Both the position numbers and the translations under genes were made by a program. The notes beneath the pieces were generated by a model. The model searched no databases and was not told the origin of the DNA. It saw only the letters and a program-made list of their open reading frames with translations. A DNA stretch of 64,000 bases from Macrostomum lignano (Eukaryota), in NCBI GenBank assembly GCA_002269645.1, contig NIVC01000891.1:186001-250000 (forward strand), written 5' to 3'. Positions 231 through 32,100 of the stretch are shown here, piece after piece. Each line of letters opens with the position of its first letter. Within the stretch, counting starts at the first letter, position 1.

Positions 231-2702
231 TATTGAATGACATTTACAGCTCAGCTCAAAGAGCAGGTGCTGCAGCAGCTGAATTTTGAAGTCAATTTGT
301 GTATCTCAGAAACCATATGAGAATGAGTTGTAATCATCTTCATGGTATCTGGTATCAATTTAAAAATGTAGTAAGTGTAGTAATTTTAAGAATGTCAACA
401 TTAAAAATTGCCAAAATTTACAAATAGGCAGATAGACTCTCACTTTCTATTTTTGCATGTAAACACCAAGATAGCAGAGTACAATTGAAAATGACTAAAT
501 AGAATAATATATATAGCATTCAGATTGCAAGGTAAACATATACTGCTACACATAGAAATAAATACAAATAGAAGTAGATAGACTATGCTAGTGTTACTTG
601 TAATGAACTTAACATACTCGTACAACGAATTACGCTGCTCCTTCGGATCTAGCATTAGATATGCTTCTTAATTAAAAAGGCTTTCTAAGGGGTCATTAAA
701 TACAATTAAAATATATAATACCAGCATTCTTTTTACTTTGACCTAAGCATATGATCTATTTCTAAGGGTTCCTGCCGTACCTATTGTCCTTTGCTTTTGC
801 TAGCCAAAACAGCATTCAAATATGGTGATATTAGAGGAACATACTAAATAGATTGGCAGGAATAAATTAGAGTTATTCTGTGGATTACTGAGCGTTAGAG
901 CTCAAGATATACTCATAAGATCAAAAGTGAATATCATTAGAAGTGAATCATCACAGATTTTCACACAAACATAAACAAAACTGCTTACTTAAGTATGCTA
1001 CTTGGCTATAAATGGTTAAAACCCAATATAATGAACTTAATAAGGTCTATACTTCTTTAGTAAAATCACAAGAACATGCAATGAAAAACTACTCTTTGTT
1101 TAGTATTTTTCTACATAATTAGAAGATTTGGGAACATTTACATGCTTATGAGCTGAGTAAACTTACACCTTACAGGAAATTTTGTGCTTATGAAAAAAGT
1201 CTAAATGTAACATCAATAGGCATAAGTAAGTAACAGTGCATTGACAGTCGCAGATAAAATGGAATAACAATATTTAAAATGTATCTAAAAGAATGAATCA
1301 CTGAAGATCATAATGGTTGGCGTTGTTTATCAGAAAACTTACACCTTACAGGAATTTTTTAACAGTAGACAAATATCATGCAATCGAGACAGGGCCAAAT
1401 AAGTTCATAAATATTGAAAACACAGCGGTAAAACATCCACAAGCTCACAGATGAAGGTTTTCCCCAATATTTTCAGTCATTTTCCCATAGACAAATATAT
1501 TACACGTGCACAAAAAACATTATGAAACAAAAAAACGTACTTAAGATACAAGTCAGAAAAATACGTTTTTGGTCGCTATCGCCACAAAAAAACATAAACT
1601 CTGACTTAAAGTTTAAAAAAAAATTTTTTAATCAGTTTTTTATTAACGAAAGTTAAATTCATGTACAATTGCTTCTAATTTAACAATGAAATTCATGATG
1701 TAAGAAAAAATTTGTTTATAACTTACGTACATTTCAATCTGAGATTTACCCTGGTGTCAGCAAATTTTTCAAACCCAAGAATTCCAAGAAAATTCTTCTC
1801 CACCCCCACCTTAATATTACCAATTCCAGAATCAGAATCGGTTCAGATCTTCCAAGAAAAACAGCAGTATAACTATTTAATTCTGTTGAATGTTTGACTG
1901 CCTTAACAACCTCACGGCTCACTTAGCAAAATTTTTCACTTTCTTCTTGACAATTGTCATTCAATAATAAAAACTTTATAGCACGTATCTCCCTCTAGTT
2001 ATGGAGACAAAAAGTTATACTTCACAAATTGGTTCTGGTTCTGGAACCAGAACAAGCAATATGAAAAGGCCCTATTAATGAAGTCTTGAACATTAGAAGT
2101 GTCTTGATTTGAATCTCATCGTTTCGTTTTGATCTTATCTTGAACAAAATCTCAAAATCAACCACCCGTTAAAAAGTAAAATGTTTCTGCTATATTATAC
2201 CCATAAATTGCACTACTGGAATACATGTACATACCACTGCCGGATCCATAGCCGTTAGAAAATGGGTTCCGGTGCCGGAACTCTAGCCATTGCCACTTAA
2301 TTAGACCCCTTAAATTTTTGGCGGTTGCATGCACGTTGGCATGTTATAGGCCTAGTATTAAAAATTCAAAAGAATTTCTTTCTAAAAATTTAATACAGCG
2401 TAAACACTCGCTACGAGTATAATATATCGTTGTAGTGTACCGTGCCAATAAGTTCAAATTATTCTACAATAAGCACTACCTTTTAAATATACCTGAGCGC
2501 ATTAAAATAACTCACAAACAAAATCTATGCGTTAGCCTGGGTTTAAAGCAAAGCGCCACGAAATGTACTTTTTAGATTTTATATACTGCGATGAATAAGT
2601 TCTAAAAGATTCTCCAACGCAATCCGCCGCCGGACTAGTTACACAGCTTAGTCTACTCGAAAATTATCGTATAATTAGAAATAGCTGTATAGGTGTGAGA
2701 AT

Positions 2703-3070
2703 CAGGGGCGTAGCCAGAGGGGGGGCAAGGGGGGCCGTGGCGCCCCACCCCCCTAAAAGAAACTGGTGCCCCCGGCCCCTCCTAAAAGAAACTGGCGCCC
2801 CCGATAAAAGAAACTGGCGCCCCCCCTAAAAGAAACTGGCGCCCCCCCCCCCTAAAAGAAACTGGCGCCCCCGATAAAAGAAACTGGCGCCCCCCCTATA
2901 AGAAACTGGCGCCCCCCCTAAAAGAAACTGGCGCCCCCCCTATAAGAAACTGGCGCCCCCCTAAAAGAAAAAGGCGCCCCCCCTAAAAGAAACTGGCGCC
3001 CCCCCCTATAAGAAGCTGGCGCCCCCTAACTCACGCCCCCCCCCAATCAAAATTCCTGGCTACGCCCCTG
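2703..3070. mobile_element. Non-autonomous hAT-type DNA transposon (MITE) with an internal ~22-24 bp tandem repeat
   Basis: Perfect 15-bp TIRs (CAGGGGCGTAGCCAG at 2703-2717; reverse complement at 3056-3070) flanked by an identical 8-bp TSD GTGAGAAT (2695-2702 and 3071-3078). The interior repeats CCCCCCTAAAAGAAACTGGCG. Confidence 0.9.
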
Positions 3071-3158
3071 GTGAGAATAGCTCAGCAAAAGCAATTCTAG
3101 CATATTGTGCAAATGCTTATGTACTTAATTTTTACCTTTCTTTTTTGCACGACCCGTT

Positions 3159-4198
3159 TGTGATAAATAGGCAATTAGATAATAGCATGCACGGTGAGCA
3201 ATTATTTAGGCCCTAGACAAACCTACTTGGAGCGTTCGGAGATTTTAAAGCTATTAATCCTAATCGCCTATCGCCGGTCGGCGAGTTCTACCAGTCTTCT
3301 CCAATAGCCGCAGATACAGTACAAGAAAATAAAGAACACGAGGAAACACAAACCGAAAGATTTAGAGAGTGATAATCCTATTTCAAGAATAACTAACTTG
3401 ATTGACGGTTTAATTTGACTAGCTGAGTTACAAGATTTAGACAAACGACGCAGATAACTAGAGTTGACAAAACGACAATAACGGTTAATAAATAATGATT
3501 ATACACGCACTGACAAGCGGATCTCAGCTGAAGAAGAAAGAGGCACCGAACACAGGACCACGGAGAAGACTCCTAACCCCTGGCCTAAGCCAGAACCTAC
3601 TCTCAAACGAGAGCCCTGCCGAACCGACCGTTCAACGGAGTACCGACTAAGTTCTATCGGCACTGCCCTTCAGTGTAACACTGGGGCCCTCGGGGTCGAG
3701 GCCGCGTACTTGATCAGATCCGACAGTCTCTGTCTAACCGCGCTTGATAGCGACGACTTCAGACAGGAATTTGCCGTAGACGTTACGCCACAAGACTACT
3801 GCGGTTGGGCGGGAACAAAGATATGGACCGGGGGTGATGAAATCAAAACGCCTCAAAGCGCGAACCAACAAGGGGAGGAAAATCGGGCCACCGGCCGGGA
3901 ACTGGACAAGACAAACCGGGGAAAAGGAGCAAGCGAGATCCGATTGCCAAAACACACTTTCATATATAGTCAGAGTCAACCCCTCACAAAACCCCCCTCA
4001 AGCCGGGTGGTGGTCGTCTGGCCGGCCGCTTGCTAAGCCGATTTGCACTGTGCCCGCGGCGCCGGGTAGAACTGAAACTTGCCGCGTGCCAGGGTCCAGG
4101 CCGGTTCTGATTGGCTGACCGCGCAAAGCTGGGGTTCGCAGACAAACTCAACCCTCCGCTGAGTCACAAAATCGGCGTCTAACTCTAACCTGTTTACA
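3159..4198 (-). mobile_element. Possible solo-LTR-like or promoter-like segment
   Basis: The minus strand starts TGTAAACA (4198), has CCAATCAG (~4110) and a TATATA box (~3965), then a T-rich tract, and could end ...TATCACA (3159). No matching TSD was found, so the boundaries are unproven. Confidence 0.25.
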
Positions 4199-4784
4199 AT
4201 TTTAGATTTCAACCAACTAGAAAAAGTACACAAAAAACGCATGACTAAACTAAAGCAAAATAACAATTCAATAACAATATAGAAACTAATGCAGTCAATT
4301 TACACGCAAAGATGCTCACACTACACGTTTGAAACCTAAAGGCAGTAATTAGGTTCACCCCCGGTTCAACCCCCAGAATATAAAAAAACTGCTCTCCTAA
4401 AGACTAGAGGCCACGCGCAAGTCTAAAACTCTATGCGCAAGTATGACTTTTCGTGTGCTATAGAATAAATATATTTTCAGTCTGATTTTTAAGGAAAAAT
4501 TTGGGTGAACCCGAGTAGGGGTGCATGAATTCAGTAGTTAGTCAGTTTGCAAGCGTCTGCTCATGCAGATCCGTTAAATTTGGACAATTCCCAGAAAAGA
4601 CGTCCGTATATTACGTCCTTCTTTGCGTTAGCCTATACGTCAAAGTGGATGTACGTCAAGTACTTAAAGTGAAAAGAATATGAATGTTAAATGGAACTCT
4701 AGAAGTAAAATTCTTAGTTTAGCAACGTCTGACTCTCGCAGCGTAAAGCAAACGTAACCCCCAGCCAAGCCATTGAGCTACAAT

Positions 4785-4870
4785 TTGTGTCCTTGAGCAA
4801 GACAATTAACTCTGCTTTGCTTCAGTTCACTTAGCTGTAAAATGGGTGCCAGCGTTAGCTGGGGTAATTG
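4785..4870 (+). mobile_element. SINE central-domain relic
   Basis: TGTGTCCTTGAGCAAGACAATTAACTCT...CACTTAGCTGTAAAATGGGTGCCAG resembles, from memory, the conserved core shared by many invertebrate SINEs. No Pol III head was seen. Confidence 0.4.
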
Positions 4871-5354
4871 AGGGTGTGTGTGGCGACCCCCTGTCCTTGG
4901 ACTGAACAGCCGTACGCAGCCTTCAGATGCGCCGCGCAATAGCTGCTTCTGAGCTGTCGGTTGCACATCTGGCCATTAGGGCAGGTGTAATCGCAAATTC
5001 AATTAAAATTAAAATTTTATAGTTGCATGTGCATACATGTACTAATTTATTGTAGTGTCCGGTTACGCATGCACCGATGAGCAATCTCTGGATCTCGGGG
5101 CCGCGGGCATTGCACTTAACAACCCTTTCCCCACAGCATTTGTTTAACCCTCCCACATTTGGCTGTCTGCCCCGGCTTGTGTGGCATGTCCAAAAATGTC
5201 CTGATTGGCTAGTACATGTACCCCTCGTCCCAGGCGGGGGACAGGGGGACATGTCCCCCCTAGTATAAAAGCTATGGGGGACCTGCCATGCTTTGTCCCC
5301 CCACCCCACCAATTGTGACTCGTTGTAGTAATCAATAATTTTTCTTCAGGGCGT

Positions 5355-5540
5355 CAAAATGAGTGCCTACGGCGCTAAATGAGTGCCTGCGGCTCTAAAA
5401 TGAGTGCCTGTGGCGCTAAAATGAGAGCCTGCGGCGCTAAATGAGTGCCTGCGGCTCTAAAATGAGTGCATGTGGCGCTAAAATGAGAGCCTGCGGCGCT
5501 AAAAAGAATGCCTGCGGCGTTAAAAAGAAGTGCCTGCGGT
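5355..5540. repeat. ~21-bp minisatellite (AAAATGAGTGCCTGCGGCGCT)
   Basis: About 8 degenerate tandem copies are visible. Confidence 0.8.
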
Positions 5541-6039
5541 GCCAAACTGTAGCCATGTAAACTATAGCTAGCAGCTGTCCTGAGGCTCGACTCTCTCCTC
5601 ACTTCTTTCCGGGATTGTGGCTCGGGAACATACGGTACGGGCGGGACTCTCGTAGGAGGGACTGACCGCGGTCACTCGACTCGACACGTACGTAGTTAGC
5701 TCGTACTACTCTGCTAGTGGATGCTACGTTTAAGATCGCGCCGTGTCGTAAGTATAAAATAGTTATTATCGTCCTGTCTGCACTGTTTTCTCGTAGTTTG
5801 ATGGAACTACACTATGCATTTCATAGTCGACGACGCTATCTAAAAATTAGCTAAAAAGAAGACCTTGTAGTAACGAATAAAATATTGGATGTTTTATAGC
5901 ATAAATATTTCAACTAAACAATAGCTGCTGCGCTATTATAATGGGGTAGTGCAGGGGAAACAGCAAAGCCTTATAAGTACAGGAAAAAGTGCCGATCGAA
6001 ATAGCCAAGCAAAGAACAGGCGGACATCGGGCGTGCCTG

Positions 6040-6114
6040 CGACACGATATATCGTCCGGATGGAGACTGTTGAGTCAACAGCTTTGCCCCATCAGGAGTC
6101 ATAGGTCCGAGTCG
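6040..6114 (-). promoter_or_regulatory. Type-2 (form 2) SECIS element, assigned to the SelN 3' UTR
   Basis: RNA reads CGACUCGG-ACCU-AUGAC-UCCUGAUGGGG-C-AAA-GCUGUUG-ACU-CAACAGU-CUCCAUCCGGA-CGAU-AUA-UCGUGUCG. This gives helix I (7 of 8 pairs), an internal loop, the AUGA/GA quartet (AUGA at 6102-6099; CGAU at 6054-6051), an 11-bp helix II with one mismatch, unpaired AAA (6085-6083) and a 7-bp apical mini-helix. It lies on the same strand as, and downstream of, the UGA-containing gene. Confidence 0.88.
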
Positions 6115-6619
6115 CCTGCTAATTGAGGACTAAACCGGTGCATGGGCACGGTGCCCCAGTGATCGACTTGCAGCAGAACTTGCTCAGACAGACCGCAATC
6201 TGAGTAAGCTTTGCTGTACAATCGAGCACTTGATCGGAGCGAAGGTAACTACCACAGGTGTACAGAGTCGCGAATTTGATATTAATTCTCTTGCTTTAAG
6301 CCACAAAATTGGTTTACACACAGCAGATATATAATAAAGTCTTTGATAGAAAATAGTGGCAGAGTAAAAGTAAAACTTAATTTAAAGTACAAATGTACTT
6401 GTAGAAAAAAATTGTCCTGCCAAAATATGCTCATTCTGTCGGAATAAAAAATGAACGGATTTTTAAATCAATAAAATTCACACCACTGCAGCTTTGGACC
6501 GGTCTTTTGGTTTAGAAAATGTAAATTAGGAATGCATTAAATAACTGATCTTGGTAGGGAGCTCCTTGGGATTGGATTGGATGATAGCTCGTGCATGCAA
6601 GAGACCTAGTAATTTGGCA

Positions 6620-7752
6620 GGGGCTGCTTGGCTGAGAAGGAAGGAGTGCACAATGGGGTGGCTGGGGCTGCTTGGGTTGGCTGATAAGGAAGGAGTGCAC
6701 AATGGGGTGGCTGGGGCTGCTTAGCTGAGAAGGAAGGAGTGCACAATGGGGTGGCTGGGGCTGCTTAGCTGAGAAGGAAGGAGTGCACAATGGGGTGGCT
6801 GGGGCTGCTTAGCTGAGAAGGAAGGAGTGCACAATGGGGTGGCTGGGGCTGCTTGGCTGAGAAGGAAGGAGTGCACAATGGGGTGGCTGGGGTTGATTGG
6901 GTTGGCTGATAAGGAAGGAGTGCACAATGGGGTGGCTGGGGCTGCTTAGCTGAGAAGGAAGGAGTGCACAATGGGGTGGCTGGGGCTGCTTAGCTGAGAA
7001 GGAAGGAGTGCACAATGGGGTGGCTGGGGCTGCTTAGCTGAGAAGGAAGGAGTGCACAATGGGGTGGCTGGGGCTGCTTAGCTGAGAAGGAAGGAGTGCA
7101 CAATGGGGTGGCTGGGGCTGCTTAGCTGAGAAGGAAGGAGTGCACAATGGGGTGGCTGGGGCTGCTTAGCTGAGAAGGAAGGAGTGCACAATGGGGTGGC
7201 TGGGGCTGCTTAGCTGAGAAGGAAGGAGTGCACAATGGGGTGGCTGGGGCTGCTTAGCTGAGAAGGAAGGAGTGCACAATGGGGTGGCTGGGGCTGCTTA
7301 GCTGAGAAGGAAGGAGTGCACAATGGGGTGGCTGGGGCTGCTTAGCTGAGAAGGAAGGAGTGCACAATGGGGTGGCTGGGGCTGCTTAGCTGAGAAGGAA
7401 GGAGTGCACAATGGGGTGGCTGGGGCTGCTTGGCTGAGAAGGAAGGAGTGCACAATGGGGTGGCTGGGGTTGATTGGGTTGGCTGATAAGGAAGGAGTGC
7501 ACAATGGGGTGGCTGGGGCTGCTTGGCTGATAAGGAAGGAGTGCACAATGGGGTGGCAGGGGCTGCTTAGCTGATAAGGAAGGAGTGCACAATGGGGTGG
7601 CAGGGGCTGCTTAGCTGATAAGGAAGGAGTGCACAATGGGGTGGCTGGGGCTGCTTGGGTTGGCTGATAAGGAAGGAGTGCACAATGGGGTGGCTGGGGC
7701 TGCTTGGGTTGGCTGATAAGGAAGGAGTGCGCAATGGGGTGGCTGGGGCTGC
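6620..7752. repeat. 44-bp minisatellite (GCTGAGAAGGAAGGAGTGCACAATGGGGTGGCTGGGGCTGCTTA) between the SelN stop and its SECIS
   Basis: About 25 near-identical tandem copies, with occasional longer variants. Confidence 0.95.
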
Positions 7753-8051
7753 ACAACTGAGTTGAGTAAAATGATCAGTTAAATTCTATGAAAGATAATT
7801 ATAATAAAACACTCCGTACAGATAAATATCCAAACTAAGCGCACGGAAGTTACAAAGTTTGGACATTTTCTTGGACGTATCTTTAATTGTAAAAAATGAG
7901 TTTCATAGTCATATACCAGAGTAGCGTAGGGTGCAAGTAGGCACAAAAGCCATTTTGGCTGCAAATAGTTCGGTAAAAAGTGTCATCGGATAGAATGAGA
8001 GCATCGGAAAGAATAAAAATGAAGAGAGATAAGCAGCTGTCGAGTTTCCTT

Positions 8052-8124
8052 CTATTTTTTGTCCGCAATGGCTAAGCCGTCTTCCAGGAACTTCAAGTAG
8101 GCCTCGCCGTGAGCCTCCTCGACT
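8052..8124 (-). CDS. SELENON: SelN exon 6 (last coding; [23 protein letters not shown])
   Basis: TTGCAG acceptor; phase 2 matches the donor at 8335; TAG stop at 8054-8052; resembles the SelN C-terminal helix. Confidence 0.85.
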
Positions 8125-11100
8125 CTGCAAGCAGTTTTGGATTGAAGACTCTCTTAGTTAACACTCTCAGACCCTTCAGCAGGGCATCAGCTACCTGATC
8201 CTACAGATCCTTCAGCAGTCTACCTGATCTCAGATCCTTCAGCAGGCTACCTGATCTCAGTCTTTAGCAGGCCACCAGCTCTGATCTCAGATCTTCGATC
8301 CTAATTACTTCAGGGAAAATGACACAGCTACTCACGAGAAGTTGCTGGTGATTTTCTTATCCGCAGAATCCAGCATAGCGTTGGCGTAGAGGCTGTGCAC
8401 CACAGTCCCGTTGCCGTCGCTGATGAGGGATGTCACGGGGAAGCTGTAGGCCTCCAAAGTCCTGGTCGACACCTGCGCTAGCCAAGGATCTTGATCCTTC
8501 TCCTGCTGCCACTTCTGCAGGTCGATAATCAGCACCCAGGTGCTCACAAATCGACGCTCCAGCAGCGACTGGACGGCCGGGTTCTCCAGCGCGGTCTTGC
8601 GGAGAACCCGGCCGGAGCCTCAGCAGCTCTGGTCGTCCAGGGAGCCCCAGAGCACCACTGAGTGCACCAGCCGGGGGCTTCCTTTGCCGTCGTCCACGTC
8701 GGACTTGGCGGCGAGCTTCGCCCGGCGAAAGGCCTCCGGGAAGGGTAGGTAGGGCACCCGCTTGAACGGGTACAGCTCCACTTCCAGCAGGCTGAAGGCG
8801 CGGTCGAAACTCATCGGCTGTTCTGAGGGCTTCGCCACTGCCGCCAGCTGATGGTCATATCGACCTGCGGGATGGCCACAATCTCCTTACCGCTCCGATC
8901 CTCTCCTTCCGCCCCCGGTCTTTTCTTCTTCCACCCCCGATCCTCTCTCTTTCCGCCCCCGGTCTTTTCTTCTTCCACCCCCGATCCTCTCTCTTTCCGC
9001 CCCCGGTCTTTTCTTCTTCCGCCCCCGATCCTCTCTCTTTCCGCCCCCGGTCTTTTCTTCTTCCACCCCCGATCCTCTCTCCTTCCGCCCCCGGTCTTTT
9101 CTTCTTCCGCCCCCGATCCTCTCTCTTTCCGCCCCCGGTCTTTTCTTCTTCCGCCCCCGATCCTCTCTCTTTCCGCCCCCGGTCTTTTCTTCTTCCACCC
9201 CCGATCCTCTCTCTTTCCGCCCCGGTCTTTTCTTCTTCCACCCCCGATCCTCTCTCTTTCCGCCCCCGGTCTTTTCTTCTTCCACCCCCGGTCTTTTCTT
9301 CTTCCGACCCCGATCCTCTCTCTTTCCGCCCCCGGTCTTTTCTTCTTCCACCCCCGATCCTCTCTCTTTCCGCCCCCGGTCTTTTCTTCTTCCACCCCCG
9401 ATCCTCTCTCTTTCCGCCCCCGGTCTTTTCTTCTTCCACCCCCGGTCTTTTCTTCTTCCGCCCCCGATCCTCTCTCCTTCCGCCCCCGATCCTCTCTCCT
9501 TCCGCCCCCGATCTTCTCTCCTTCCGCCCCCGATCCTCTCTCCTTCCGGCCCCGATCCTCTCTCCTACCGCCCCCGATCCTCTTCTTCCACCCCCGATCC
9601 TTATTTCATCCGTCCCGGATCCTCTCTCCTTCCGAAAACGATCCTCTCTCCTTCCGCCCCCTATCTATCCTTCTTCCGCCCCCAATCCTCAATCGTTCCG
9701 CCCCGCATCTTTTATGTTTCCGCTTCAATGCTCTCCTCTTCCTCGCTGTTCCCCTAGCAACTCCCCCAGCATACCAACAGCCTCGGGCTTCAGCTTGCAC
9801 GCATTCTCCGTGCACAGTCGCATACTACTCGAGTAGCCAATATCGACTTCGACAAGCAGTTCATCTGGCGCGCCGGACATCCCGGCCTGCACCCACTCCA
9901 TGTCGACGTTGAGATTCTTGTCGGCGGGCAGGTCCATGTCCAGCAGCAGCAGGCGGGAGAAATCGGCCGAGAACACGGCGTGCCCGAACCAGAAGCTGGG
10001 CGTGAACCAGAACGGATAGGCCGGCGGGCGGGCCAGCTGGAACTCGCCGTGCAGTCGGAAGGCCACCTCGACGTGGTCGGGCCCAACCGAGCGCACCAAA
10101 GCGACGCTGCTGTGCGGTGGGTGACGCGTGGAGGCGAAGGCGCCAGGGTGGAAGGCGGACAGCAGGGCGCTGATGGCGCGGGCTCCGGGCGAGTCTGAGT
10201 AGCTGGGCGGCAGGTAGCGGTTCATTGAGTGCGCCGTCTCGTAGTCGAACTCGTCGCGAATCCCGACGCCCGACTGGCTGTCGTCTAGCGGCCGGCGGGT
10301 GACGTAATAGGGCCGCCCGATGGACTGGTTGGCTGGCGGGCGGAGGCCCGCGATGATCAGCGACTCGGGCAGATCCAGGGGACAGCGATGGGGCCGAGTC
10401 CAGTTGAACAGGGCGTTCAGGTAATGCAGGTTGGTGCCCCTCTCCTGGGTGTCCGGCGAGACGGGGAAGGGTTGATACAGGTGAGATGTAATTAATGCAA
10501 CCGGTGCAATGGGGTGGTAGGGTGGCGGCATCTTAATTGCAGAGTGGGGTGGCGGCATCTTAATTGCAGAGTGGGGTGGCGGCATCTTAATTGCAGAGTG
10601 GGGTGGCGGCATCTTAATTGCAGAGTGGGTGGCGGCATCTTAATTGCAGAGTGGCGGCATCTTAATTGCAGAGTGGGTGGCGGCATCTTAATTGCAGAGT
10701 GGGTGGCGGCATCTTAATTGCAGAGTGGGGTGGCGGCATCTTAATTGCAGAGTGGGGTGGCGGCATCTTAATTGCAAGTGGCGGCATCTTAATTGCAGAG
10801 TGGGGTGGCGGCATCTTAATTGCAGAGTGGGGTGGCGGCATCTTAATTGCAGAGTGGCGGCATCTTAATTGCAGAGTGGGTGGCGGCATCTTAATTGCAG
10901 AGTGGGGTGGCGGCATCTTAATTGCAGAGTGGGTGGCGGCATCTTAATTGCAGAGTGGGTGGCGGCATCTTAATTGCAGAGTGGGTGGCGGCATCTTAAT
11001 TGCAGAGTGGGGTGGCGGCATCTTAATTGCAGAGTGGGTGGCGGCATCTTAATTGCAGAGTGGGTGGCGGCATCTTAATTGCAGAGTGGGTGGCGGCATC

Positions 11101-14100
11101 TTAATTGCAGAGTGGGTGGCGGCATCTTAATTGCAGAGTGGCGGCATCTTAATTGCAGAGTGGGTGGCGGCATCTTAATTGCAGAGTGGCGGCATCTTAA
11201 TTGCAGAGTGGGTGGCGGCATCTTAATTGCAGAGTGGGGTGGCGGCATCTTAATTGCAGAGTGGTTGGCGGCATCTTAATTGCAGAGTGGCGGCATCTTA
11301 ATTGCAGAGTGGGTGGCGGCATCTTAATTGCAGAGTGGGTGGCGGCATCTTAATTGCAGAGTGGGGTGGCGGCATCTTAATTGCAGAGTGGGTGGCGGCA
11401 TCTTAATTGCAGAGTGGGTGGCGGCATCTTAATTGCAGAGTGGGGTAGCAGCATCTTAATTGCAGAGTGGGGTGGCGGCATCTTAATTGCAGAGTGGGGT
11501 GGCGGCATCTTAATTGCAGAGTGGGGTGGCGGCATCTTAATTGCAAGTGGCGGCATCTTAATTGCAGAGTGGGGTGGCGGCATCTTAATTGCAGAGTGGG
11601 TGGCGGCATCTTAATTGCAGAGTGGGTGGCGGCATCTTAATTGCAGAGTGGGGTGGCGGCATCTTAATTGCAGAGTGGGTGGCGGCATCTTAATTGCAGA
11701 GTGGGGTGGCGGCATCTTAATTGCAGAGTGGGTGGCGGCATCTTAATTGCAGAGTGGGGTGGCGGCATCTTAATTGCAAGTGGCGGCATCTTAATTGCAG
11801 AGTGGGGTGGCGGCATCTTAATTGCAGAGTGGGGTGGCGGCATCTTAATTGCAGAGTGGGGTGGCGGCATCTTAATTGCAGAGTGGGTGGCGGCATCTTA
11901 ATTGCAGAGTGGGGTGGCGGCATCTTAATTGCAAGTGGCGGCATCTTAATTGCAGAGTGGGGTGGCGGCATCTTAATTGCAGAGTGGGTGGCGGCATCTT
12001 AATTGCAGAGTGGGTGGCGGCATCTTAATTGCAGAGTGGGGTGGCGGCATCTTAATTGCAGAGTGGCGGCATCTTAATTGCAGAGTGGGTGGCGGCATCT
12101 TAATTGCAGAGTGGGGTGGCGGCATCTTAATTGCAGAGTGGGTGGCGGCATCTTAATTGCAGAGTGGGTGGCGGCATCTTAATTGCAGAGTGGGTGGCGG
12201 CATCTTAATTGCAGAGTGGGGTGGCGGCATCTTAATTGCAGAGTGGGGTGGCGGCATCTTAATTGCAGAGTGGGGTGGCGGCATCTTAATTGCAGAGTGG
12301 GTGGCGGCATCTTAATTGCAAGTGGCGGCATCTTAATTGCAGAGTGGGGTGGCGGCATCTTAATTGCAGAGTGGGTGGCGGCATCTTAATTGCAGAGTGG
12401 CGGCATCTTAATTGCAGAGTGGGGTGGCGGCATCTTAATTGCAGAGTGGGTGGCGGCATCTTAATTGCAGAGTGGCGGCATCTTAATTGCAGAGTGGGGT
12501 GGCGGCATCTTAATTGCAGAGTGGGTGGCGGCATCTTAATTGCAGAGTGGGGTGGCGGCATCTTAATTGCAGAGTGGGTGGCGGCATCTTAATTGCAGAG
12601 TGGGTGGCGGCATCTTAATTGCAGAGTGGGGTGGCGGCATCTTAATTGCAGAGTGGGTGGCGGCATCTTAATTGCAGAGTGGGGTGGCGGCATCTTAATT
12701 GCAGAGTGGGTGGCGGCATCTTAATTGCAGAGTGGGTGGCGGCATTTTAATTGCAGAGTGGGGTAGCAGCATCTTAATTGCAGAGTGGGGTGGCGGCATC
12801 TTAATTGCAGAGTGGGGTGGCGGCATCTTAATTGCAGAGTGGGGTGGCGGCATCTTAATTGCAAGTGGCGGCATCTTAATTGCAGAGTGGGGTGGCGGCA
12901 TCTTAATTGCAGAGTGGGGTGGCAGCCTCTTAATTGCAGAGTGGGGTGGCGGCATCTTAATTGCAGAGTGGGTGGCGGCATCTTAATTGCTGAGTGGGTG
13001 GCGGCATCTTAATTGCAGAGTGGGTGGCGGCATCTTAATTGCAGAGTGGCGGCATCTTAATTGCAGAGTGGGGTGGCGGCATCTTAATTGCAGAGTGGGT
13101 GGCGGCATCTTAATTGCAGAGTGGGGTGGCGGCATCTTAATTGCAGAGTGGCGGCATCTTAATTGCAGAGTGGGTGGCGGCATCTTAATTGCAGAGTGGG
13201 GTGGCGGCATCTTAATTGCAGAGTGGGTGGCGGCATCTTAATTGCAGAGTGGGTGGCGGCATCTTAATTGCAGAGTGGGTGGCGGCATCTTAATTGCAGA
13301 GTGGGGTGGCGGCATCTTAATTGCAGAGTGGGTGGCGGCATCTTAATTGCAGAGTGGGTGGCGGCATCTTAATTGCAGAGTGGGTGGCGGCATCTTAATT
13401 GCAGAGTGGGTGGCGGCATCTTAATTGCAGAGTGGCGGCATCTTAATTGCAGAGTGGGTGGCGGCATCTTAATTGCAGAGTGGCGGCATCTTAATTGCAG
13501 AGTGGGTGGCGGCATCTTAATTGCAGAGTGGGGTGGCGGCATCTTAATTGCTGAGTGGGGTGGCGGCATCTTAATTGCAGAGTGGGTGGCGGGTCAGAGA
13601 GTTAAATAAACCAGTTTGCCGGTACAAACCGCGGACAAATCCTTAGTGATTGTGTCCAGGTGAAGCGGATCGAATTCGCAGTACAGGCGAGTCATTCGCT
13701 CTTCTTTGTTGGCCCCGCCGCCTTCGAGCGCTCGATAGCTGGTCGCCATCGGCGGGTTGAAATCCTGCAAAGTACAACGGGTAAAGGTGCATGCATATTT
13801 ATTAAGGCTTTGCCAGGTGTTAGTAAAGGCCAGCTAATTATCCCACCTTGACAGGTCCAAGCCGGTCCATCAGCTTCCCAAACTCAGCGGGATCCAGGTA
13901 GTCATCGTCTTCGGAGTCCACGGTGCGGAACAGGCGGAAGAAGGACTCGCCGATGTAGCCAATCACCGCTTCCGAGCTCATCGGCATGCTGACCGGCTTG
14001 CGGCCGGCCAGATCGTCCGAGGGCACATCCAGGCCTTTGCTGGAATGTTGGGATTGACTGAGCTGCGCAACTCCACTTAACACCTGCACTATATTGGAGA

Positions 14101-15069
14101 TGCCGAAGACCTGATTAGACAAGCCAAAAGTTGATTGCACACCTTAAATACCTGTTTGAAACCCTCGAAAAACCTATGAAACACCCACAGAACCAAATCG
14201 GACACCCATAAAAACCCGATCAGACACCCATAAACCCGATCGGACACCCATAAACCCCGATAGGACACCCATAAACCCCGATCGGACACCCATAAACCCC
14301 GATTGGACACCCATAAACCCCGATTGGACACCCATAAACCCCGATTGGACACCCATAAACCCCGATCGGACACCCATAAACCCCGATTGGAGACCCATAA
14401 ACCCCGATTGGACACCCATAAACCCCGATTGGACACCCATAAACTCCGATCGGACACCCATAAACCAGATTGGACACCCATAAACTCCGATCGGACACCC
14501 ATAAACCAGATTGGACACCCATAAAACCCGATTGGACACCCATAAACCCCGATTGGACACCCATAAACCCCGATTGGACACCTTTAAAACCCGATTGGAC
14601 ACCCATAAACCCCGATTGGACACCTATAAAACCCGATTGGACACCCATAAACCCCGATTGGACACCCATAAACTCCGATCGGACACCCATAAAACCCGAT
14701 TGGACACCCATAAACCCCGATTGGACACCCATAAAACCCGACTGGACACACTCTGCTCAAGTAAAAAACTTGACGATTTAGCTTGGCACTGGTTAGTACG
14801 AACCGGTTAAGCACCATCTCTAAATTCGGGTCGCCAACACCCAGCCGTTCCGCGATCCCAAATCCCAGCACCAGTCGTTTGAAATTAACGTAGGCCTTGG
14901 CCTGCAGCGCCGGTCGCTGGTAGAGAGACGCCAACGCCAGCGCAGTGAAGAGAACGGCCACAGCCGAGGTGATGTACAGAGTTCGGGGCTTGAATCTGAA
15001 CACCAGGTGCCGACGGTTAAGCGACACCGACGACAACGACAGAGGAGGCCCGGCGTCAACCGACGCCAT
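8052..15069 (-). CDS. SELENON: Selenoprotein N (ER membrane thioredoxin-fold selenoprotein), 6 coding exons, 621 aa, Sec at codon 503
   Basis: Exons 15069-14804, 14039-13847, 13764-13630, 10444-9775, 8864-8336 and 8124-8052 all have GT/AG ends, compatible phases and total 1866 nt. Motifs: N-terminal hydrophobic anchor; EF-hand-like [13 protein letters not shown]; [21 protein letters not shown]; NLNVDMEW; EVDIGY; [20 protein letters not shown]; [26 protein letters not shown]; YSFPV; [10 protein letters not shown]. All match vertebrate SelN. Confidence 0.95.
8336..8864 (-). CDS. SELENON: SelN exon 5, containing the Sec UGA (8622-8620)
   Basis: CCGCAG acceptor and GTGAGT donor. The ORF track splits this exon into 8620..8838 and 8332..8547 because of the UGA; homology continues in frame across it ([16 protein letters not shown]). 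Confidence 0.93.
8574..8614 (-). promoter_or_regulatory. Sec redefinition element (SRE)-like hairpin immediately 3' of the UGA
   Basis: RNA UGA-GGCUC-CGGCCGGGUUCUCC-[GCAAGACCGCGCU]-GGAGAACCCGGCCG forms a perfect 14-bp Watson-Crick stem starting 5-6 nt after the UGA, the position of the vertebrate SELENON SRE. Confidence 0.8.
8885..9680. repeat. CT-rich ~44-bp minisatellite in SelN intron 4
   Basis: CCCCCGATCCTCTCTCTTTCCGCCCCCGGTCTTTTCTTCTTCCA repeated, degrading to ~22-bp units. Confidence 0.9.
9775..10444 (-). CDS. SELENON: SelN exon 4
   Basis: CCCAG acceptor and GTATGC donor; [15 protein letters not shown]...FRLHGEFQL...DMEW...EVDIGY. Confidence 0.9.
10512..13590. repeat. 23/26/27-bp minisatellite (GGGTGGCGGCATCTTAATTGCAGAGT(G)), ~3.1 kb, SelN intron 3
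   Basis: More than 100 tandem copies. The many [16 protein letters not shown] ORFs here are artefacts. Confidence 0.97.
13630..13764 (-). CDS. SELENON: SelN exon 3
   Basis: TTGCAG acceptor, GTTTGT donor, 135 nt, phase 0-0. [15 protein letters not shown] resembles vertebrate IEARFQPLLPETMTK. Not present in the ORF track. Confidence 0.8.
13847..14039 (-). CDS. SELENON: SelN exon 2 (EF-hand-like segment)
   Basis: TTCCAG acceptor, GTGGGA donor; [28 protein letters not shown]. Confidence 0.82.
14190..14750. repeat. 21-bp minisatellite (GGACACCCATAAACCCCGATT), SelN intron 1
   Basis: About 26 tandem copies. Confidence 0.95.
14804..15069 (-). CDS. SELENON: SelN exon 1 (start codon and membrane anchor)
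   Basis: ATG at 15069-15067; hydrophobic [28 protein letters not shown] donor gives phase 2, matching exon 2; this donor choice is inferred. Confidence 0.75.
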
Positions 15070-15641
15070 TGTCTTCTTTGATACAAATTAGTTGAAGCAA
15101 TGAGTGGGCTTGTGCGTGTTTAGTGCACTTCACTGAAACGGGAAACATGTTTATTGGAAATGTTTTAAATAAAGAAGTAAACACAGAACAAAGACCTAAG
15201 CAAAGATTCCAAGAGCCAGTAGGAAAATATTATTGATAATAGGATTATTAGCTAGTTTTTTTATTAAAAAGCCACAAGCACGTCAAACTACGGTAGGCTT
15301 AGGTTTCGCGGTCGCAACTTGTACTTTCGTGTTTGTGCACCATCAGACGAATAGTCTCATTATTGCTTCACAGTCCAACAGAGCTATGTACAGAGTTCTA
15401 AAAATAGATCCTGGACCAAGGGTAGCTAAAACGCTTAACTTTCTATTAATGTACACAGTCAGGGAGAGAGGACAACGATAGGCGGAAAACCAAATGTACA
15501 TTGGCTAGAATATCTCTTACCCCGCCCCACACCCCTCAGACCTGTACATTCTTTCTAACAATAAAATTAGAGTGGGCCAGCGAGAGGGGCCATAAAAGCT
15601 TAAAAAAGATTCAGGCGCGCATCAAATCAAGCCAGCCAGCC
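15070..15641. promoter_or_regulatory. Probable bidirectional promoter and 5' UTR interval between SelN and the BOK-like gene
   Basis: Only 572 bp of repeat-free, AT-richer DNA separates the divergent ATGs. No specific motif was identified. Confidence 0.45.
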
Positions 15642-16277
15642 ATGCAGAACCCACCCAACCCCAGCATACGCATCGACGGACCAGCAGCGGGCGAAGACGA
15701 GAACAACAATGAGATTGTCTCGGCATTCGCCGCCGCGGCCTCTCCAGTCTGGCGGCAGGAGGCGCGCAGCCTCTGTCGCGAGTACATCGGCCATCGACTG
15801 TACCGCGCCGGCTGCATGACCCCCAGCCTGCTGTACAGCCTGCCGCCAAATGCTGGCTCCCAGACTAGCCAGCGCCTGCGGCGTCTCTGCCACAGACTGG
15901 AGCTGCTGCACCCAGCTGTGTTCGCTCAACCGCTGACTGGCCAGCTGGGCCTCACCCTGCTGCCTACCAACGGCGTCACCGACGCTGTCGCTATGGCAAC
16001 GATTCGCCGAGCGTATCGCAAGTTTGCCAGACGCCTGTTGAGCATGCCGCCAGACTGTGACTGGGACTGGGGCAGGCCGGTGGCGCTGTTCTGCATGGCT
16101 GGAGCATTCGCTGTGGATTATGCGAGTGCAAGGATGCAGCTCAGGCTGCTGGGAGGCCGCTCCTGCGAGCAGGCTATTGAATCTCTGGCCGAGTGCCTGT
16201 CCGAGTGCCTGGCAGAGTGCGCAGTAGAGTGCTCGGAGCTGTTTGACTGGCTGACCGAACGAGGCGGTTGGGTCTTT
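15642..16277 (+). CDS. BOK: Bcl-2 family protein, BOK-like (main exon, BH4-BH3-BH1-BH2)
   Basis: GCCATG start. BH4 EARSLCREYIGHRLYRAG (BOK QAKALGREYVHARLLRAG), BH3-like RLRRLCHRLELLHPAVF, BH1 WDWGRPVALFCMAGAFAVD, BH2 WLTERGGW. The donor is probably at 16278 (GTGAGA) or 16272; if unspliced the ORF stops at 16292. Orthology to BOK rests on motif resemblance. Confidence 0.8.
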
Positions 16278-16315
16278 GTGAGAACTGGATGACGTTTGTG
16301 TTGGAACTCATTGTT

Positions 16316-29100: not shown

Positions 29101-32100
29101 ATAAGATTCCAACAGCAGATGGTCTATAAGATTCCAACAGCAGATGGTCTATAAGATTCCAACAGTGGATGATCTATAAGATTCCAACAGCAGATGATCT
29201 ATAAGATTCCAACAGCAGATGGTCTATAAGATTCCAACAGCAGATGATCTATAAGATTCCAACAGCAGATGATCTATAAGATTCCAACAGCAGATGGTCT
29301 ATAAGATTTCAGCAGCAGATGGTCTATAAGATTCCAACAGTGGATGATCTATAAGATTCCAACAGTGGATGATCTATAAGATTCCAACAGCAGATGGTCT
29401 ATAAGATTCCAACAGCAGATGGTCTATAAGATTTCAACAGTGGATGGTCTATAAGATTCCAACAGCAGATGATCTATAAGATTCCAACAGTGGATGATCT
29501 ATAAGACTCCAACAGCAGATGATCTATAAGATTCCAACAGTGGATGATTTATAAGACTCCAACAGCAGATGATCTATAAGATTCCAATAGCAGACGGTCT
29601 ATAAGACTCCAACAGCAGATGATCTATAAGATTCCAATAGCAGATGGTCTATAAGATTCCAGCAGTGGATGATCTATAAGACTCCAACAGCAGATGATCT
29701 ATAAGACTCCAACAGCAGATGATCTATAAGATTCCAACAGTGGATGATCTATAAGATTCCAGCAGTGGATGATCTATAAGACTCTAACAGCAGATGATCT
29801 ATAAGATTCCAATAGCAGATGGTGTATAAGACTCCAACAGCAGATGATCTATAAGATTCCAACAGTGGATGATCTATAAGATTCTAACAGTGGATGATCT
29901 ATAAGATTCCAGCAGTGGATGATCTATAAGACTCTAACAGCAGATGATCTATAAGACTCCAACAGCAGATGATCTATAAGATTCCAACAGCAGATGGTCT
30001 ATAAGACTCCAACAGCAGATGATCTATAAGATTCCAACAGCAGATGATCTATAAGATTCCAACAGTGGATGATCTATAAGATTCCAACAGCAGATGATCT
30101 ATAAGACTCCAACAGCAGATGATCTATAAGATTCCAACAGCAGATGGTCTATAAGATTCCAACAGCAGATGATCTATAAGATTCCAACAGCAGATGATCT
30201 ATAAGATTCCAACAGCAGACGGTCTATAAGATTCCAACAGCAGATGATCTATAAGATTCCAACAGCAGATGGTCTATAAGATTCCAACAGCAGATGATCT
30301 ATAAGATTCCAACAGCAGATGATCTATAAGATTCCAAAGTGGATGATCTATAAGATTCCAACAGCAGATGATCTATAAGATTCCAACAGCAGATGATCTA
30401 TAAGATTCTAACAGCAGATGATCTATAAGATTCCAACAGCAGATGATCTATAAGATTCCAACAGCAGATGGTCTATAAGATTCCAACAGCAGATGATCTA
30501 TAAGATTCCAACAGCAGATGGTCTATAAGATTCCAACAGCAGATGGTCTATAAGATTCCAACAGCAGATGATCTATAAGATTCCAACAGCAGATGGTCTA
30601 TAAGATTCCAACAGCAGATGGTCTATAAGATTCCAACAGCAGACGGTCTATAAGATTCCAACAGCAGATGATCTATATTCTATAAGATTCCAACAGCAGA
30701 TGGTCTATAAGATTCCAACAGCAGATGATCTATAAGATTCCAACAGCAGATGATCTATAAGATTCCAAAGTGGATGATCTATAAGATTCCAACAGCAGAT
30801 GATCTATAAGATTCCAACAGCAGATGATCTATAAGATTCCAAAGTGGATGATCTATAAGATTCCAACAGCAGATGGTCTATAAGATTCCAACAGCAGATG
30901 GTCTATAAGATTCCAACAGTGGATGATCTATAAGATTCCAACAGCAGATGATCTATAAGATTCCAACAGCAGATGGTCTATAAGATTCCAACAGCAGATG
31001 ATCTATAAGATTCCAACAGCAGATGATCTATAAGATTCCAACAGCAGATGATCTATAAGATTCCAACAGTAGATGATCTATAAGACTCCAACAGCAGATG
31101 ATCTATAAGATTCCAACAGCAGATGGTCTATAAGATTCCAACAGCAGATGATCTATAAGATTCCAACAGCAGATGATCTATAAGATTCCAACAGCAGATG
31201 GTCTATAAGATTCCAACAGCAGATGATCTATAAGATTCCAACAGCAGATGGTCTATAAGATTCCAACAGCAGATGGTCTATAAGATTCCAACAGCAGATG
31301 ATCTATAAGATTCCAACAGCAGATGGTCTATAAGATTCCAACAGCAGATGGTCTATAAGATTCCAACAGCAGATGGTCTATAAGATTCCAACAGTGGATG
31401 ATCTATAAGATTCCAACAGCAGATGATCTATAAGACTCCAACAGCAGATGATCTATAAGATTCCAACAGTGGATGATCTATAAGATTCCAAAGTGGATGA
31501 TCTATAAGATTCCAACAGCAGATGATCTATAAGATTCCAAAGTGGATGATCTATAAGATTCCAACAGCAGATGATCTATAAGATTCCAACAGCAGATGGT
31601 CTATAAGATTCCAACAGCAGATGATCTATAAGATTCCAACAGCAGATGATCTATAAGATTCCAACAGCAGATGATCTATAAGATTCCAACAGTAGATGAT
31701 CTATAAGACTCCAACAGCAGATGATCTATAAGATTCCAACAGCAGATGGTCTATAAGATTCCAACAGCAGATGATCTATAAGATTCCAACAGCAGATGAT
31801 CTATAAGATTCCAACAGCAGACGGTCTATAAGATTCCAACAGCAGATGATCTATAAGATTCCAACAGCAGATGGTCTATAAGATACCAACAGCAGATGGT
31901 CTATAAGATTCCAACAGCAGATGATCTATAAGATTCCAAAGTGGAAGATCTATAAGATTCCAACAGCAGATGGTCTATAAGATTCCAACAGCAGATGGTC
32001 TATAAGATTCCAACAGTGGATGATCTATAAGATTCCAACAGCAGATGATCTATAAGATTCCAACAGCAGATGGTCTATAAGATTCCAACAGCAGATGATC

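What the first reader, a model, noticed from the sequence alone, without database searches (positions are those of the whole stretch)
6040..6114. Textbook type-2 SECIS 1.9 kb downstream of the SelN stop codon
The minus strand folds into helix I, the AUGA...GA kink-turn quartet, an 11-bp helix II, unpaired AAA and a 7-bp apical stem. It lies in apparently featureless DNA that no ORF caller flags. With the in-frame UGA it completes a Sec-insertion system for an invertebrate SelN that automated annotation would probably truncate or split.
Basis: partly seen in the sequence, partly recalled or inferred. Interest (0 to 1): 0.75.

Follow-up and report, generated by a model that had tools for sequence, protein, structure and literature searches.

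The report
Flatworm selenoprotein N SECIS element
The hairpin is very probably the real selenocysteine-insertion signal of the selenoprotein N gene of the flatworm Macrostomum lignano. It is an ordinary element of a well-known kind, but public annotation has missed it, and the gene sits in a phylum reported to have lost it.

Summary
On the minus strand at 6115-6039 there is a 77-nt stem-loop with every SECIS landmark:
- helix I
- AUGA (6102-6099) opposite GA (6053-6052)
- an 11-position helix II (10 pairs plus one U.C mismatch)
- unpaired CAAA (6086-6083)
- a 7-bp apical stem with a 3-nt loop

The window is Macrostomum lignano scaffold NIVC01000891.1. Upstream on the same strand lies a six-exon SelN gene (15069-8052, 621 codons). 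It has an in-frame TGA at codon 503 in the SCUGSGR motif, conserved coding sequence after the TGA, and a conserved hairpin 6 nt after the TGA. The stop codon TAG is at 8054-8052, 1,937 nt before the element.

In the 3 kb after the stop the mRNA strand has only 18 UGA triplets, and only this one can form a SECIS. GenBank truncates the protein at the UGA. Two UniProt models skip the UGA with a false 60-nt intron.

Caveats:
- "Textbook" is overstated. The base before GA is C, where the consensus is G or U.
- Rfam's SECIS model does not score the element.
- No transcript evidence could be reached.

Verdict: a new member of a known kind. It corrects the annotation and contradicts a published statement that flatworms lost SelN. 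Interest is modest.

The parts
6039..6115 (-). Type-2 SECIS element (helix I, internal loop, AUGA/GA core, helix II, CAAA bulge, 7-bp apical stem, 3-nt loop)
   Evidence: Sequence. MFE fold -35.7 kcal/mol, z = -3.1. Core-constrained fold -30.3 kcal/mol. It is the only SECIS-capable site between 8052 and 5000 on this strand.
6099..6102 (-). 5' core AUGA, followed by C6098
   Evidence: Read directly. Matches UGAN of the consensus quoted in PMC3753652.
6052..6053 (-). 3' core GA, in the context C-GA-U
   Evidence: Read directly. GA and the W position (U) fit KGAW. The K position is C, which is non-consensus.
6083..6085 (-). Unpaired AAA, 13 nt after AUGA
   Evidence: Unpaired in the MFE and constrained folds.
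6066..6082 (-). Apical 7-bp stem with ACU loop. This extra helix makes the element type 2.
8052..15069 (-). SelN gene with six GT-AG exons: 15069-14804, 14039-13847, 13764-13630, 10444-9775, 8864-8336, 8124-8052. It has 621 codons.
   Evidence: A junction search reproduces P0106 plus the C-terminus of P0108 exactly. Homology to SelN is shown.
8620..8622 (-). In-frame TGA, codon 503, the Sec of the SCUGSGR motif
   Evidence: The homeolog also has TGA here.
8575..8613 (-). Hairpin starting 6 nt after the UGA, resembling the SelN Sec redefinition element (SRE)
   Evidence: -44.9 kcal/mol for 86 nt, z = -3.5, 0 of 200 shuffles as good. Conserved in four other SelN cDNAs, with 5 pairs changed on both sides.
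8052..8054 (-). TAG stop codon of SelN
   Evidence: The C-terminus matches P0108.
6615..7752 (-). 44-nt minisatellite (about 25 copies) lying between the stop codon and the SECIS in the presumed 3'UTR
   Evidence: TRF. It contains no UGA on the mRNA strand. The array is 855 nt in the homeolog.

Best explanation
The element is the functional type-2 SECIS of the Macrostomum lignano selenoprotein N mRNA. It lies about 1.95 kb into a long 3'UTR that also holds a 1.1-kb minisatellite.

Inferred mechanism, from established knowledge of eukaryotic Sec insertion:
1. AUGA and GA form the tandem sheared G.A/A.G pairs of a kink-turn.
2. SBP2 binds that kink-turn.
3. SBP2 recruits eEFSec carrying Sec-tRNA(Sec) to ribosomes paused at UGA503 (8622-8620), about 2.3 kb upstream in the mature mRNA.
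4. The hairpin 6 nt after the UGA helps recoding locally.
5. Translation continues for 118 more codons to TAG at 8054-8052 and yields a 621-residue SelN with an SCUG redox centre.

Shown here: the sequence and fold of the element, its uniqueness in the downstream region, the gene model, the conserved post-UGA coding sequence, and the conserved hairpin next to the UGA.

Inferred: that the mRNA includes the element, that SBP2 binds it, and that Sec is inserted.
For: (1) All SECIS landmarks are present in the right order and spacing.

(2) The gene needs a SECIS.
- TGA503 sits in SCUGSGR.
- The 118 codons after it are 46-51% identical to sea-star and marmoset SelN, with invariant YSFPV and NGTVVH blocks.
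- Both homeologous copies keep the TGA, the open frame and the TAG. Across the whole coding sequence they differ at 16 synonymous and 2 non-synonymous sites.

(3) The hairpin next to the UGA is conserved with compensatory changes across five SelN mRNAs. Selection for recoding therefore acts on this gene family, including this copy.

(4) Exhaustive check: there are 18 UGA triplets on the mRNA strand between 8052 and 5000, and none in the minisatellite. With any NUGA core and either AA or CC as the loop motif, only 6102-6052 forms a SECIS-like fold.

(5) Shuffles of that 5 kb produced a hit as good in 2 of 400 cases.

(6) The homeolog on NIVC01000201.1 carries the same element at the same relative place. 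Its single change (position 6043, G to C) falls in helix I, and the fold still forms at -27.1 kcal/mol.

(7) A SelN cDNA from another animal (L009) has a SECIS that Rfam scores at 26.3 bits. Its architecture is the same: AUGA, a helix II of about 11 bp, AAA, and a short apical stem stacked almost directly on helix II.

(8) No other gene lies between the SelN stop and the element.
Against: - Rfam RF00031 and the other SECIS families gave no hit, even at E <= 10 on a 106-nt slice. Under the same settings the L009 control scored 26.3 bits.
- The base before GA is C, while the published consensus is K, meaning G or U.
- Helix II has a U.C mismatch.
- No transcript covering the region could be found.
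- An ATTAAA hexamer at 7887 could end some transcripts before the SECIS. The first AATAAA after the element is about 1 kb away at 5051, with only a TATAAA at 5898 nearby.
- The flank is about 98% identical between the homeologs, so conservation of the element there says little.
Confidence: 0.85

Rival explanations
1. The hairpin is a chance SECIS look-alike. The true SECIS lies elsewhere (further downstream, or in a non-canonical form), or this SelN copy no longer inserts Sec.
For: - Loose SECIS patterns occur about once per 100 kb by chance.
- My flexible scan also flagged coding exons and repeats elsewhere in the window.
- Rfam does not score the element.
- The K position is non-consensus.
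Against: - No alternative exists within 3 kb of the stop under very relaxed rules.
- An equally good chance hit in that stretch appeared in 0.5% of shuffles.
- The post-UGA frame, the UGA and the adjacent hairpin are all kept in both homeologs, which argues against a dead gene.
- Rfam also failed on two of three candidate SECIS in SelN cDNAs, and the SECISearch3 paper reports that many true SECIS score low with covariance models.
Confidence: 0.08
2. The element is a real SECIS but is carried only by a minor long 3'UTR isoform. Most transcripts end at a proximal site (for example ATTAAA at 7887) and yield the 502-residue truncated product or are degraded.
For: - ATTAAA lies 165 nt after the stop.
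- There is no canonical AATAAA within 1 kb after the SECIS.
Against: - A single hexamer in AT-rich sequence is weak evidence.
- A SECIS-less SelN mRNA would make a protein lacking the redox centre and the conserved C-terminus that selection has kept.
- No transcript data were available either way.
Confidence: 0.05
3. The SECIS belongs to a different, unannotated selenoprotein transcript that lies between the SelN stop and 6115.
For: The 1.9 kb between them is unannotated.
Against: That interval is an AT-rich stretch plus a 44-nt minisatellite. Its only ORFs are repeat-derived or shorter than 75 codons. None has homology support, and the same layout recurs in the homeolog.
Confidence: 0.02

Closest known systems
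SECIS and SRE of vertebrate SELENON (SEPN1) mRNA
   Same: - The host gene family is the same.
- UGA lies in the SCUG motif.
- A hairpin follows shortly after the UGA.
- A single SECIS sits far down a long 3'UTR (review PMC12839072).
   Different: - The host is a flatworm.
- The 3'UTR carries a 1.1-kb minisatellite between the stop and the SECIS.
- The core 3' side is CGAU.
- The vertebrate sequences themselves were not compared here.
Rfam RF00031 SECIS_1 (eukaryotic SECIS covariance model)
   Same: - AUGA ... AAA ... GA layout.
- Helix I, helix II and an apical stem in the same order (consensus printed).
   Different: The model has 9 nt between helix I and helix II, a 10-bp helix II and a 3-bp apical stem. 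This element has 13 nt, 11 positions and 7 bp, and it gets no score at E <= 10.
SECIS of an invertebrate SelN cDNA (Logan contig SRR19075496_10987, L009 2638-2705)
   Same: - Type 2 form.
- AUGA plus one unpaired base, then a helix II of about 11 bp.
- AAA immediately after helix II.
- The apical stem stacks almost directly on the 3' arm.
   Different: - The L009 element is AU-rich (28% GC).
- Its apical stem is 4-5 bp.
- Its K position is G.
- Its source organism is unknown to me.
Kink-turn RNA motifs with tandem sheared G.A pairs
   Same: An asymmetric internal loop followed by G.A/A.G in tandem and then a regular helix. This is my own knowledge of the motif class.
   Different: Only the sequence was examined here. 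No three-dimensional or protein-binding evidence exists for this element.

Membership tests
Eukaryotic SECIS element, type 2 | 5' core (A/G)UGAN on the 5' strand | tested here: met
   AUGAC at 6102-6098. Consensus quoted.
Eukaryotic SECIS element, type 2 | 3' core GA placed opposite so that G.A/A.G can form. The consensus context is KGAW. | tested here: inconclusive
   GA at 6053-6052 is correctly opposed and W is U. K is C rather than G or U. KGAW is a consensus, not an invariant. The frequency of C at that position was not measured.
Eukaryotic SECIS element, type 2 | Helix II of roughly 9-13 positions between the core and unpaired conserved A residues | tested here: met
   11 positions with 10 pairs. 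AAA is unpaired, 13 nt after AUGA.
Eukaryotic SECIS element, type 2 | An additional helix above the A-bulge (type 2 rather than type 1) | tested here: met
   7-bp stem at 6082-6066 with a 3-nt loop.
Eukaryotic SECIS element, type 2 | Helix I below an internal loop | tested here: met
   5 bp, a U.U mismatch, then 3 bp. The loop is 4 nt on the 5' side and 4 nt on the 3' side.
Eukaryotic SECIS element, type 2 | Thermodynamically stable fold | tested here: met
   -30.3 kcal/mol with the core held open, and -20.3 kcal/mol for the upper part.
Eukaryotic SECIS element, type 2 | Lies in the 3'UTR of an mRNA with an in-frame Sec-UGA | tested here: inconclusive
   Genomically it is on the same strand, 1,937 nt after the SelN stop, with no gene in between. 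Its inclusion in the transcript could not be tested.
Eukaryotic SECIS element, type 2 | Operational criterion, not a defining feature: a match to the curated model Rfam RF00031 (gathering score 35 bits) | tested here: not met
   No hit at gathering score or at E <= 10. A control SelN SECIS scored 26.3 bits, also below gathering. Two other SelN cDNA candidates scored nothing.
Eukaryotic SECIS element, type 2 | Binds SBP2 and supports UGA recoding | not testable with these tools
   Needs a reporter assay, EMSA or 75Se labelling.
Selenoprotein N (SELENON) | Full-length homology to SelN proteins | tested here: met
   E = 1.4e-65 (Patiria) and 1.3e-57 (Callithrix), with 97-98% of the query covered.
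Selenoprotein N (SELENON) | SCUG motif with U encoded by an in-frame TGA | tested here: met
   DDQSC-TGA-GSGR at 8622-8620.
Selenoprotein N (SELENON) | EF-hand in the N-terminal part | tested here: inconclusive
   Pfam gave no family at E <= 0.01. The stretch [13 protein letters not shown] looks like a calcium-binding loop, and UniProt names the protein 'EF-hand domain-containing'.
Selenoprotein N (SELENON) | Stem-loop (SRE) just 3' of the Sec codon | tested here: met
   Hairpin at 8613-8575, 6 nt after the UGA, with compensatory changes in orthologues. The SRE is described for SelN in PMC12839072.

The most novel reading that the evidence does not exclude
Macrostomum lignano, an early-branching rhabditophoran flatworm and a transgenic regeneration model, keeps a complete and working SelN recoding system (UGA, adjacent hairpin, SECIS) in two homeologous copies. 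SelN was then not lost before the origin of Platyhelminthes, as inferred from Schmidtea, Schistosoma and Taenia (PMC3828610), but later, within the phylum. The SECIS would also tolerate a C at the consensus K position and a 0.3-kb minisatellite-driven difference in UGA-to-SECIS spacing between the copies.
Probability: 0.8. Interest if true: 0.35.

Novelty: new member of a known kind. Interest (0 to 1): 0.3.

Why it matters
- It repairs a mis-annotated gene. GenBank PAA75298.1 and PAA88127.1 lack the redox centre and 119 C-terminal residues. Two UniProt models delete 20 residues around the Sec.
- It corrects a published inference that SelN was lost in flatworms.
- It gives a genetically tractable invertebrate in which SelN, a human myopathy gene, and its recoding elements could be studied.
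- It does not change how Sec insertion is understood.

Tried and rejected
- **Rfam scans.** Searches at gathering score and at E <= 10 on 64 kb, 601 nt and 106 nt gave no SECIS hit. Controls on SelN cDNAs gave one hit of 26.3 bits and two misses. I treat the miss as weak evidence against.
- **My own covariance model.** I built it from the printed Rfam consensus plus the L009 SECIS. It found only its own training sequence, and nothing in four other SelN cDNAs or at the window element. It was too narrow to be a test.
- **A training set of SelN SECIS from Logan cDNAs.** My scanners found a convincing element only in L009. The candidates in L003, L005 and L006 were doubtful, so I dropped this approach.
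- **Homeolog conservation.** The whole 760-nt unique segment is about 98% identical, so the intact SECIS is not a conservation peak.
- **Transcript evidence.** Exact look-up of small ORFs lying on the element or just upstream of it found nothing on record. The protein search returned no Macrostomum transcript-derived SelN products.
- **Other flexible-scan hits in the window.** These were 40752-40662, 35014-34935, 5379-5444, 29794-29897 and 32645-32748. They lie in spectrin-like or EF-hand coding exons or in tandem repeats, and they do not fold as SECIS without constraints, so I rejected them. The ungapped-pattern hit at 1696-1632 is AT-rich with a weak fold, and I rejected it too.
- **Alternative registers** (GGAC as the 3' core, CUGA as the 5' core). 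Neither gives a helix II of workable length (and inspection).

Full report
**Where the window comes from.** The minus strand of window 1-25069 is identical to locus L002, which is GenBank NIVC01000891.1 of the Macrostomum lignano assembly GCA_002269645.1. Window coordinate x equals record coordinate 186000+x. M. lignano is a free-living flatworm (Platyhelminthes, Rhabditophora, Macrostomorpha).

**The observation.** Reading the minus strand gives the following structure.
- Helix I: G6115-C6039 to C6111-G6043, then a U.U mismatch, then C6109-G6045, G6108-C6046 and G6107.U6047.
- Internal loop: ACCU on the 5' side.
- Core: AUGA 6102-6099 opposite GA 6053-6052. U6101 faces U6051 and C6098 faces C6054.
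- Helix II: U6097-G6087 against A6055-C6065. This is 11 positions with 10 pairs and one U.C mismatch.
- Unpaired C6086 AAA 6085-6083, with nothing unpaired on the 3' side.
- A 7-bp apical stem (6082-6076 with 6072-6066) and an ACU loop.

Unconstrained folding of 96 nt returns this shape at -35.7 kcal/mol, z = -3.1. With the core held open the energy is -30.3 kcal/mol.

**The host gene.** Three-frame translation and a homology search show SelN on the same strand.
- The best hit is M. lignano PAA88127.1, at 96% identity.
- Then come Patiria (1.4e-65), Strongylocentrotus, and vertebrate proteins named selenoprotein N.

A junction search gives six GT-AG exons: 15069-14804, 14039-13847, 13764-13630, 10444-9775, 8864-8336 and 8124-8052. 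Their translation equals GenBank PAA75298.1 up to residue 502. It then reads TGA (8622-8620) and continues for 118 codons to TAG at 8054-8052. The context is [15 protein letters not shown]. The stretch after the TGA is 46-51% identical to sea-star and marmoset SelN, with invariant blocks such as YSFPV and NGTVVH.

**The homeolog.** A second locus, NIVC01000201.1 (L001), has the same neighbours: an adaptin-binding gene and a Bcl-2 family gene. Its DNA is 93-95% identical. It keeps the TGA, the open frame and the TAG. The two coding sequences differ at 16 synonymous and 2 non-synonymous sites.

**Annotation.**
- PAA75298.1 and PAA88127.1 (502 residues) stop at the UGA.
- UniProt A0A1I8GCW3 and A0A1I8FYM7 jump from LVHSV to TALENP. 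This removes 60 nt (8655-8596) that begin with GT and end with AG and contain the TGA.
- No gene is called over the SECIS in either locus.

**A second recoding signal.** A hairpin at 8613-8575 starts six nucleotides after the UGA. The 86-nt stretch folds at -44.9 kcal/mol, z = -3.5, and none of 200 shuffles folds as well. Aligned with the same region of four SelN cDNAs from other animals, the helix is kept, and five of its pairs change on both sides. This corresponds to the Sec redefinition element described for SelN (PMC12839072). The 6-nt spacing in human SEPN1 is my own recollection, because the original papers were not held. The hairpin is independent evidence that this UGA is recoded.

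**Is this element the SECIS?** A eukaryotic SECIS needs a UGA/GA core. On the mRNA strand between the stop and 5000 there are only 18 UGA triplets, and none lie in the 44-nt minisatellite at 7752-6615. I allowed any NUGA core, AA or CC as the loop motif, and up to two unpaired bases at the base of helix II. Even so, only 6102-6052 folds as a SECIS (a stricter scan agrees).

Chance estimates:
- A loose ungapped pattern gives about 1.25 hits per 128 kb of shuffled window.
- Shuffles of the 5-kb downstream stretch gave any hit in 26 of 400 cases and one as good in 2 of 400.

The homeolog has the identical element, 1,640 nt after its stop (1,949 nt here, measured to AUGA). The difference is due to a minisatellite of 855 nt there against 1,138 nt here. 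Its single substitution, at 6043, opens one pair of helix I.

In the mature mRNA the UGA-to-AUGA distance would be about 2.3 kb if the 3'UTR is unspliced. That is within the range I know for animal selenoprotein mRNAs (own knowledge).

**What counts against it.**
- Rfam finds no SECIS at the gathering score, nor at E <= 10 on 601 or 106 nt. Under the same settings a SelN cDNA SECIS from another animal (L009) scores 26.3 bits, still below Rfam's 35-bit cut-off. My candidates in two other SelN cDNAs score nothing.
- The printed Rfam consensus has 9 nt between helices I and II, a 10-bp helix II and a 3-bp apical stem. The element here has 13 nt, 11 positions and 7 bp, so insertions probably account for the low score. 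That is an inference.
- The SECISearch3 paper reports that its own, much larger covariance model misses 9% of true SECIS at 10 bits and 26% at 20 bits (PMC3753652).
- The same paper gives the core consensus as UGAN/KGAW. Here it is UGAC/CGAU, so K is C.
- No transcript evidence was reachable.
- Poly(A) hexamers are equivocal: ATTAAA at 7887 before the SECIS, TATAAA at 5898 and AATAAA at 5051 after it.
- Conservation between the homeologs is uninformative, because the whole unique segment is about 98% identical.

**Comparison with what is known.** Functionally and structurally this is an ordinary type-2 SECIS serving an ordinary selenoprotein family. SelN is known from sponges to vertebrates (PMC3473315). 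The only published flatworm survey I found covers Schmidtea, Schistosoma and Taenia. It lists no SelN and infers a loss before the split of Platyhelminthes (PMC3828610). I found no paper linking Macrostomum and SelN. The M. lignano gene, present in two copies with intact recoding signals, moves that loss to a point inside the phylum.

**Verdict.** It is a new member of a known kind. Its value is a corrected annotation and a small phylogenetic correction, not a new mechanism. Interest 0.3.

Noticed in passing
window 8575-8613 (-): A strong hairpin starts 6 nt after the Sec-UGA of SelN. It is conserved with compensatory base changes in four SelN cDNAs from other animals, and it matches the Sec redefinition element known from vertebrate SEPN1.
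   Followed up: partly
window 8596-8655 (-); proteins P0107, P0108, P0106, P0001: Public models mishandle the Sec codon. Two GenBank proteins stop at it. Two UniProt models remove a false 60-nt GT...AG 'intron' that contains it, deleting 20 residues including the SCUG centre.
   Followed up: yes
window 6615-7752, 8882-9704, 10520-13592, 14200-14749: The SelN gene is packed with minisatellites:
- 44 nt x 25 copies in the presumed 3'UTR
- 22/44 nt x 37 copies in intron 4
- 26 nt x 119 copies (3 kb) in intron 3
- 21 nt x 26 copies in intron 1

Array lengths differ between the two homeologs. The gene spans 6.45 kb here and 4.1 kb there from the ATG to the UGA.
   Followed up: partly
L001 (NIVC01000201.1 387685-411786) versus window 2000-16000: A second, homeologous SelN locus has the same gene order (adaptin-binding gene, Bcl-2 family gene, SelN) at 93-95% DNA identity. 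This fits the known partial genome duplication of M. lignano (own knowledge).
   Followed up: partly
window 15501-16292 (+) and 15069 (-): A Bcl-2 family gene lies head-to-head with SelN. Their start codons are about 430 bp apart, which suggests a shared bidirectional promoter region.
   Followed up: no
window 34000-64000 (-): GC-rich exons encode spectrin repeats and an EF-hand, so this is probably one very large spectrin- or spectraplakin-like gene. Two false SECIS-like hits of my scanner fall inside its exons.
   Followed up: no
window 5858 (-), L001 about 16797: The high identity between the two homeologs downstream of the SECIS breaks at about 5858, roughly 40 nt after a TATAAA hexamer at 5898. 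This could mark the end of the transcript, but that is speculation.
   Followed up: no
window 6038-6105 (+): Rfam reports a weak hit to the RT-6 sRNA family (14.9 bits, E = 0.27-1.5) on the antisense strand of the SECIS hairpin. It is far below that family's 46.7-bit gathering score, and I take it to be chance.
   Followed up: no
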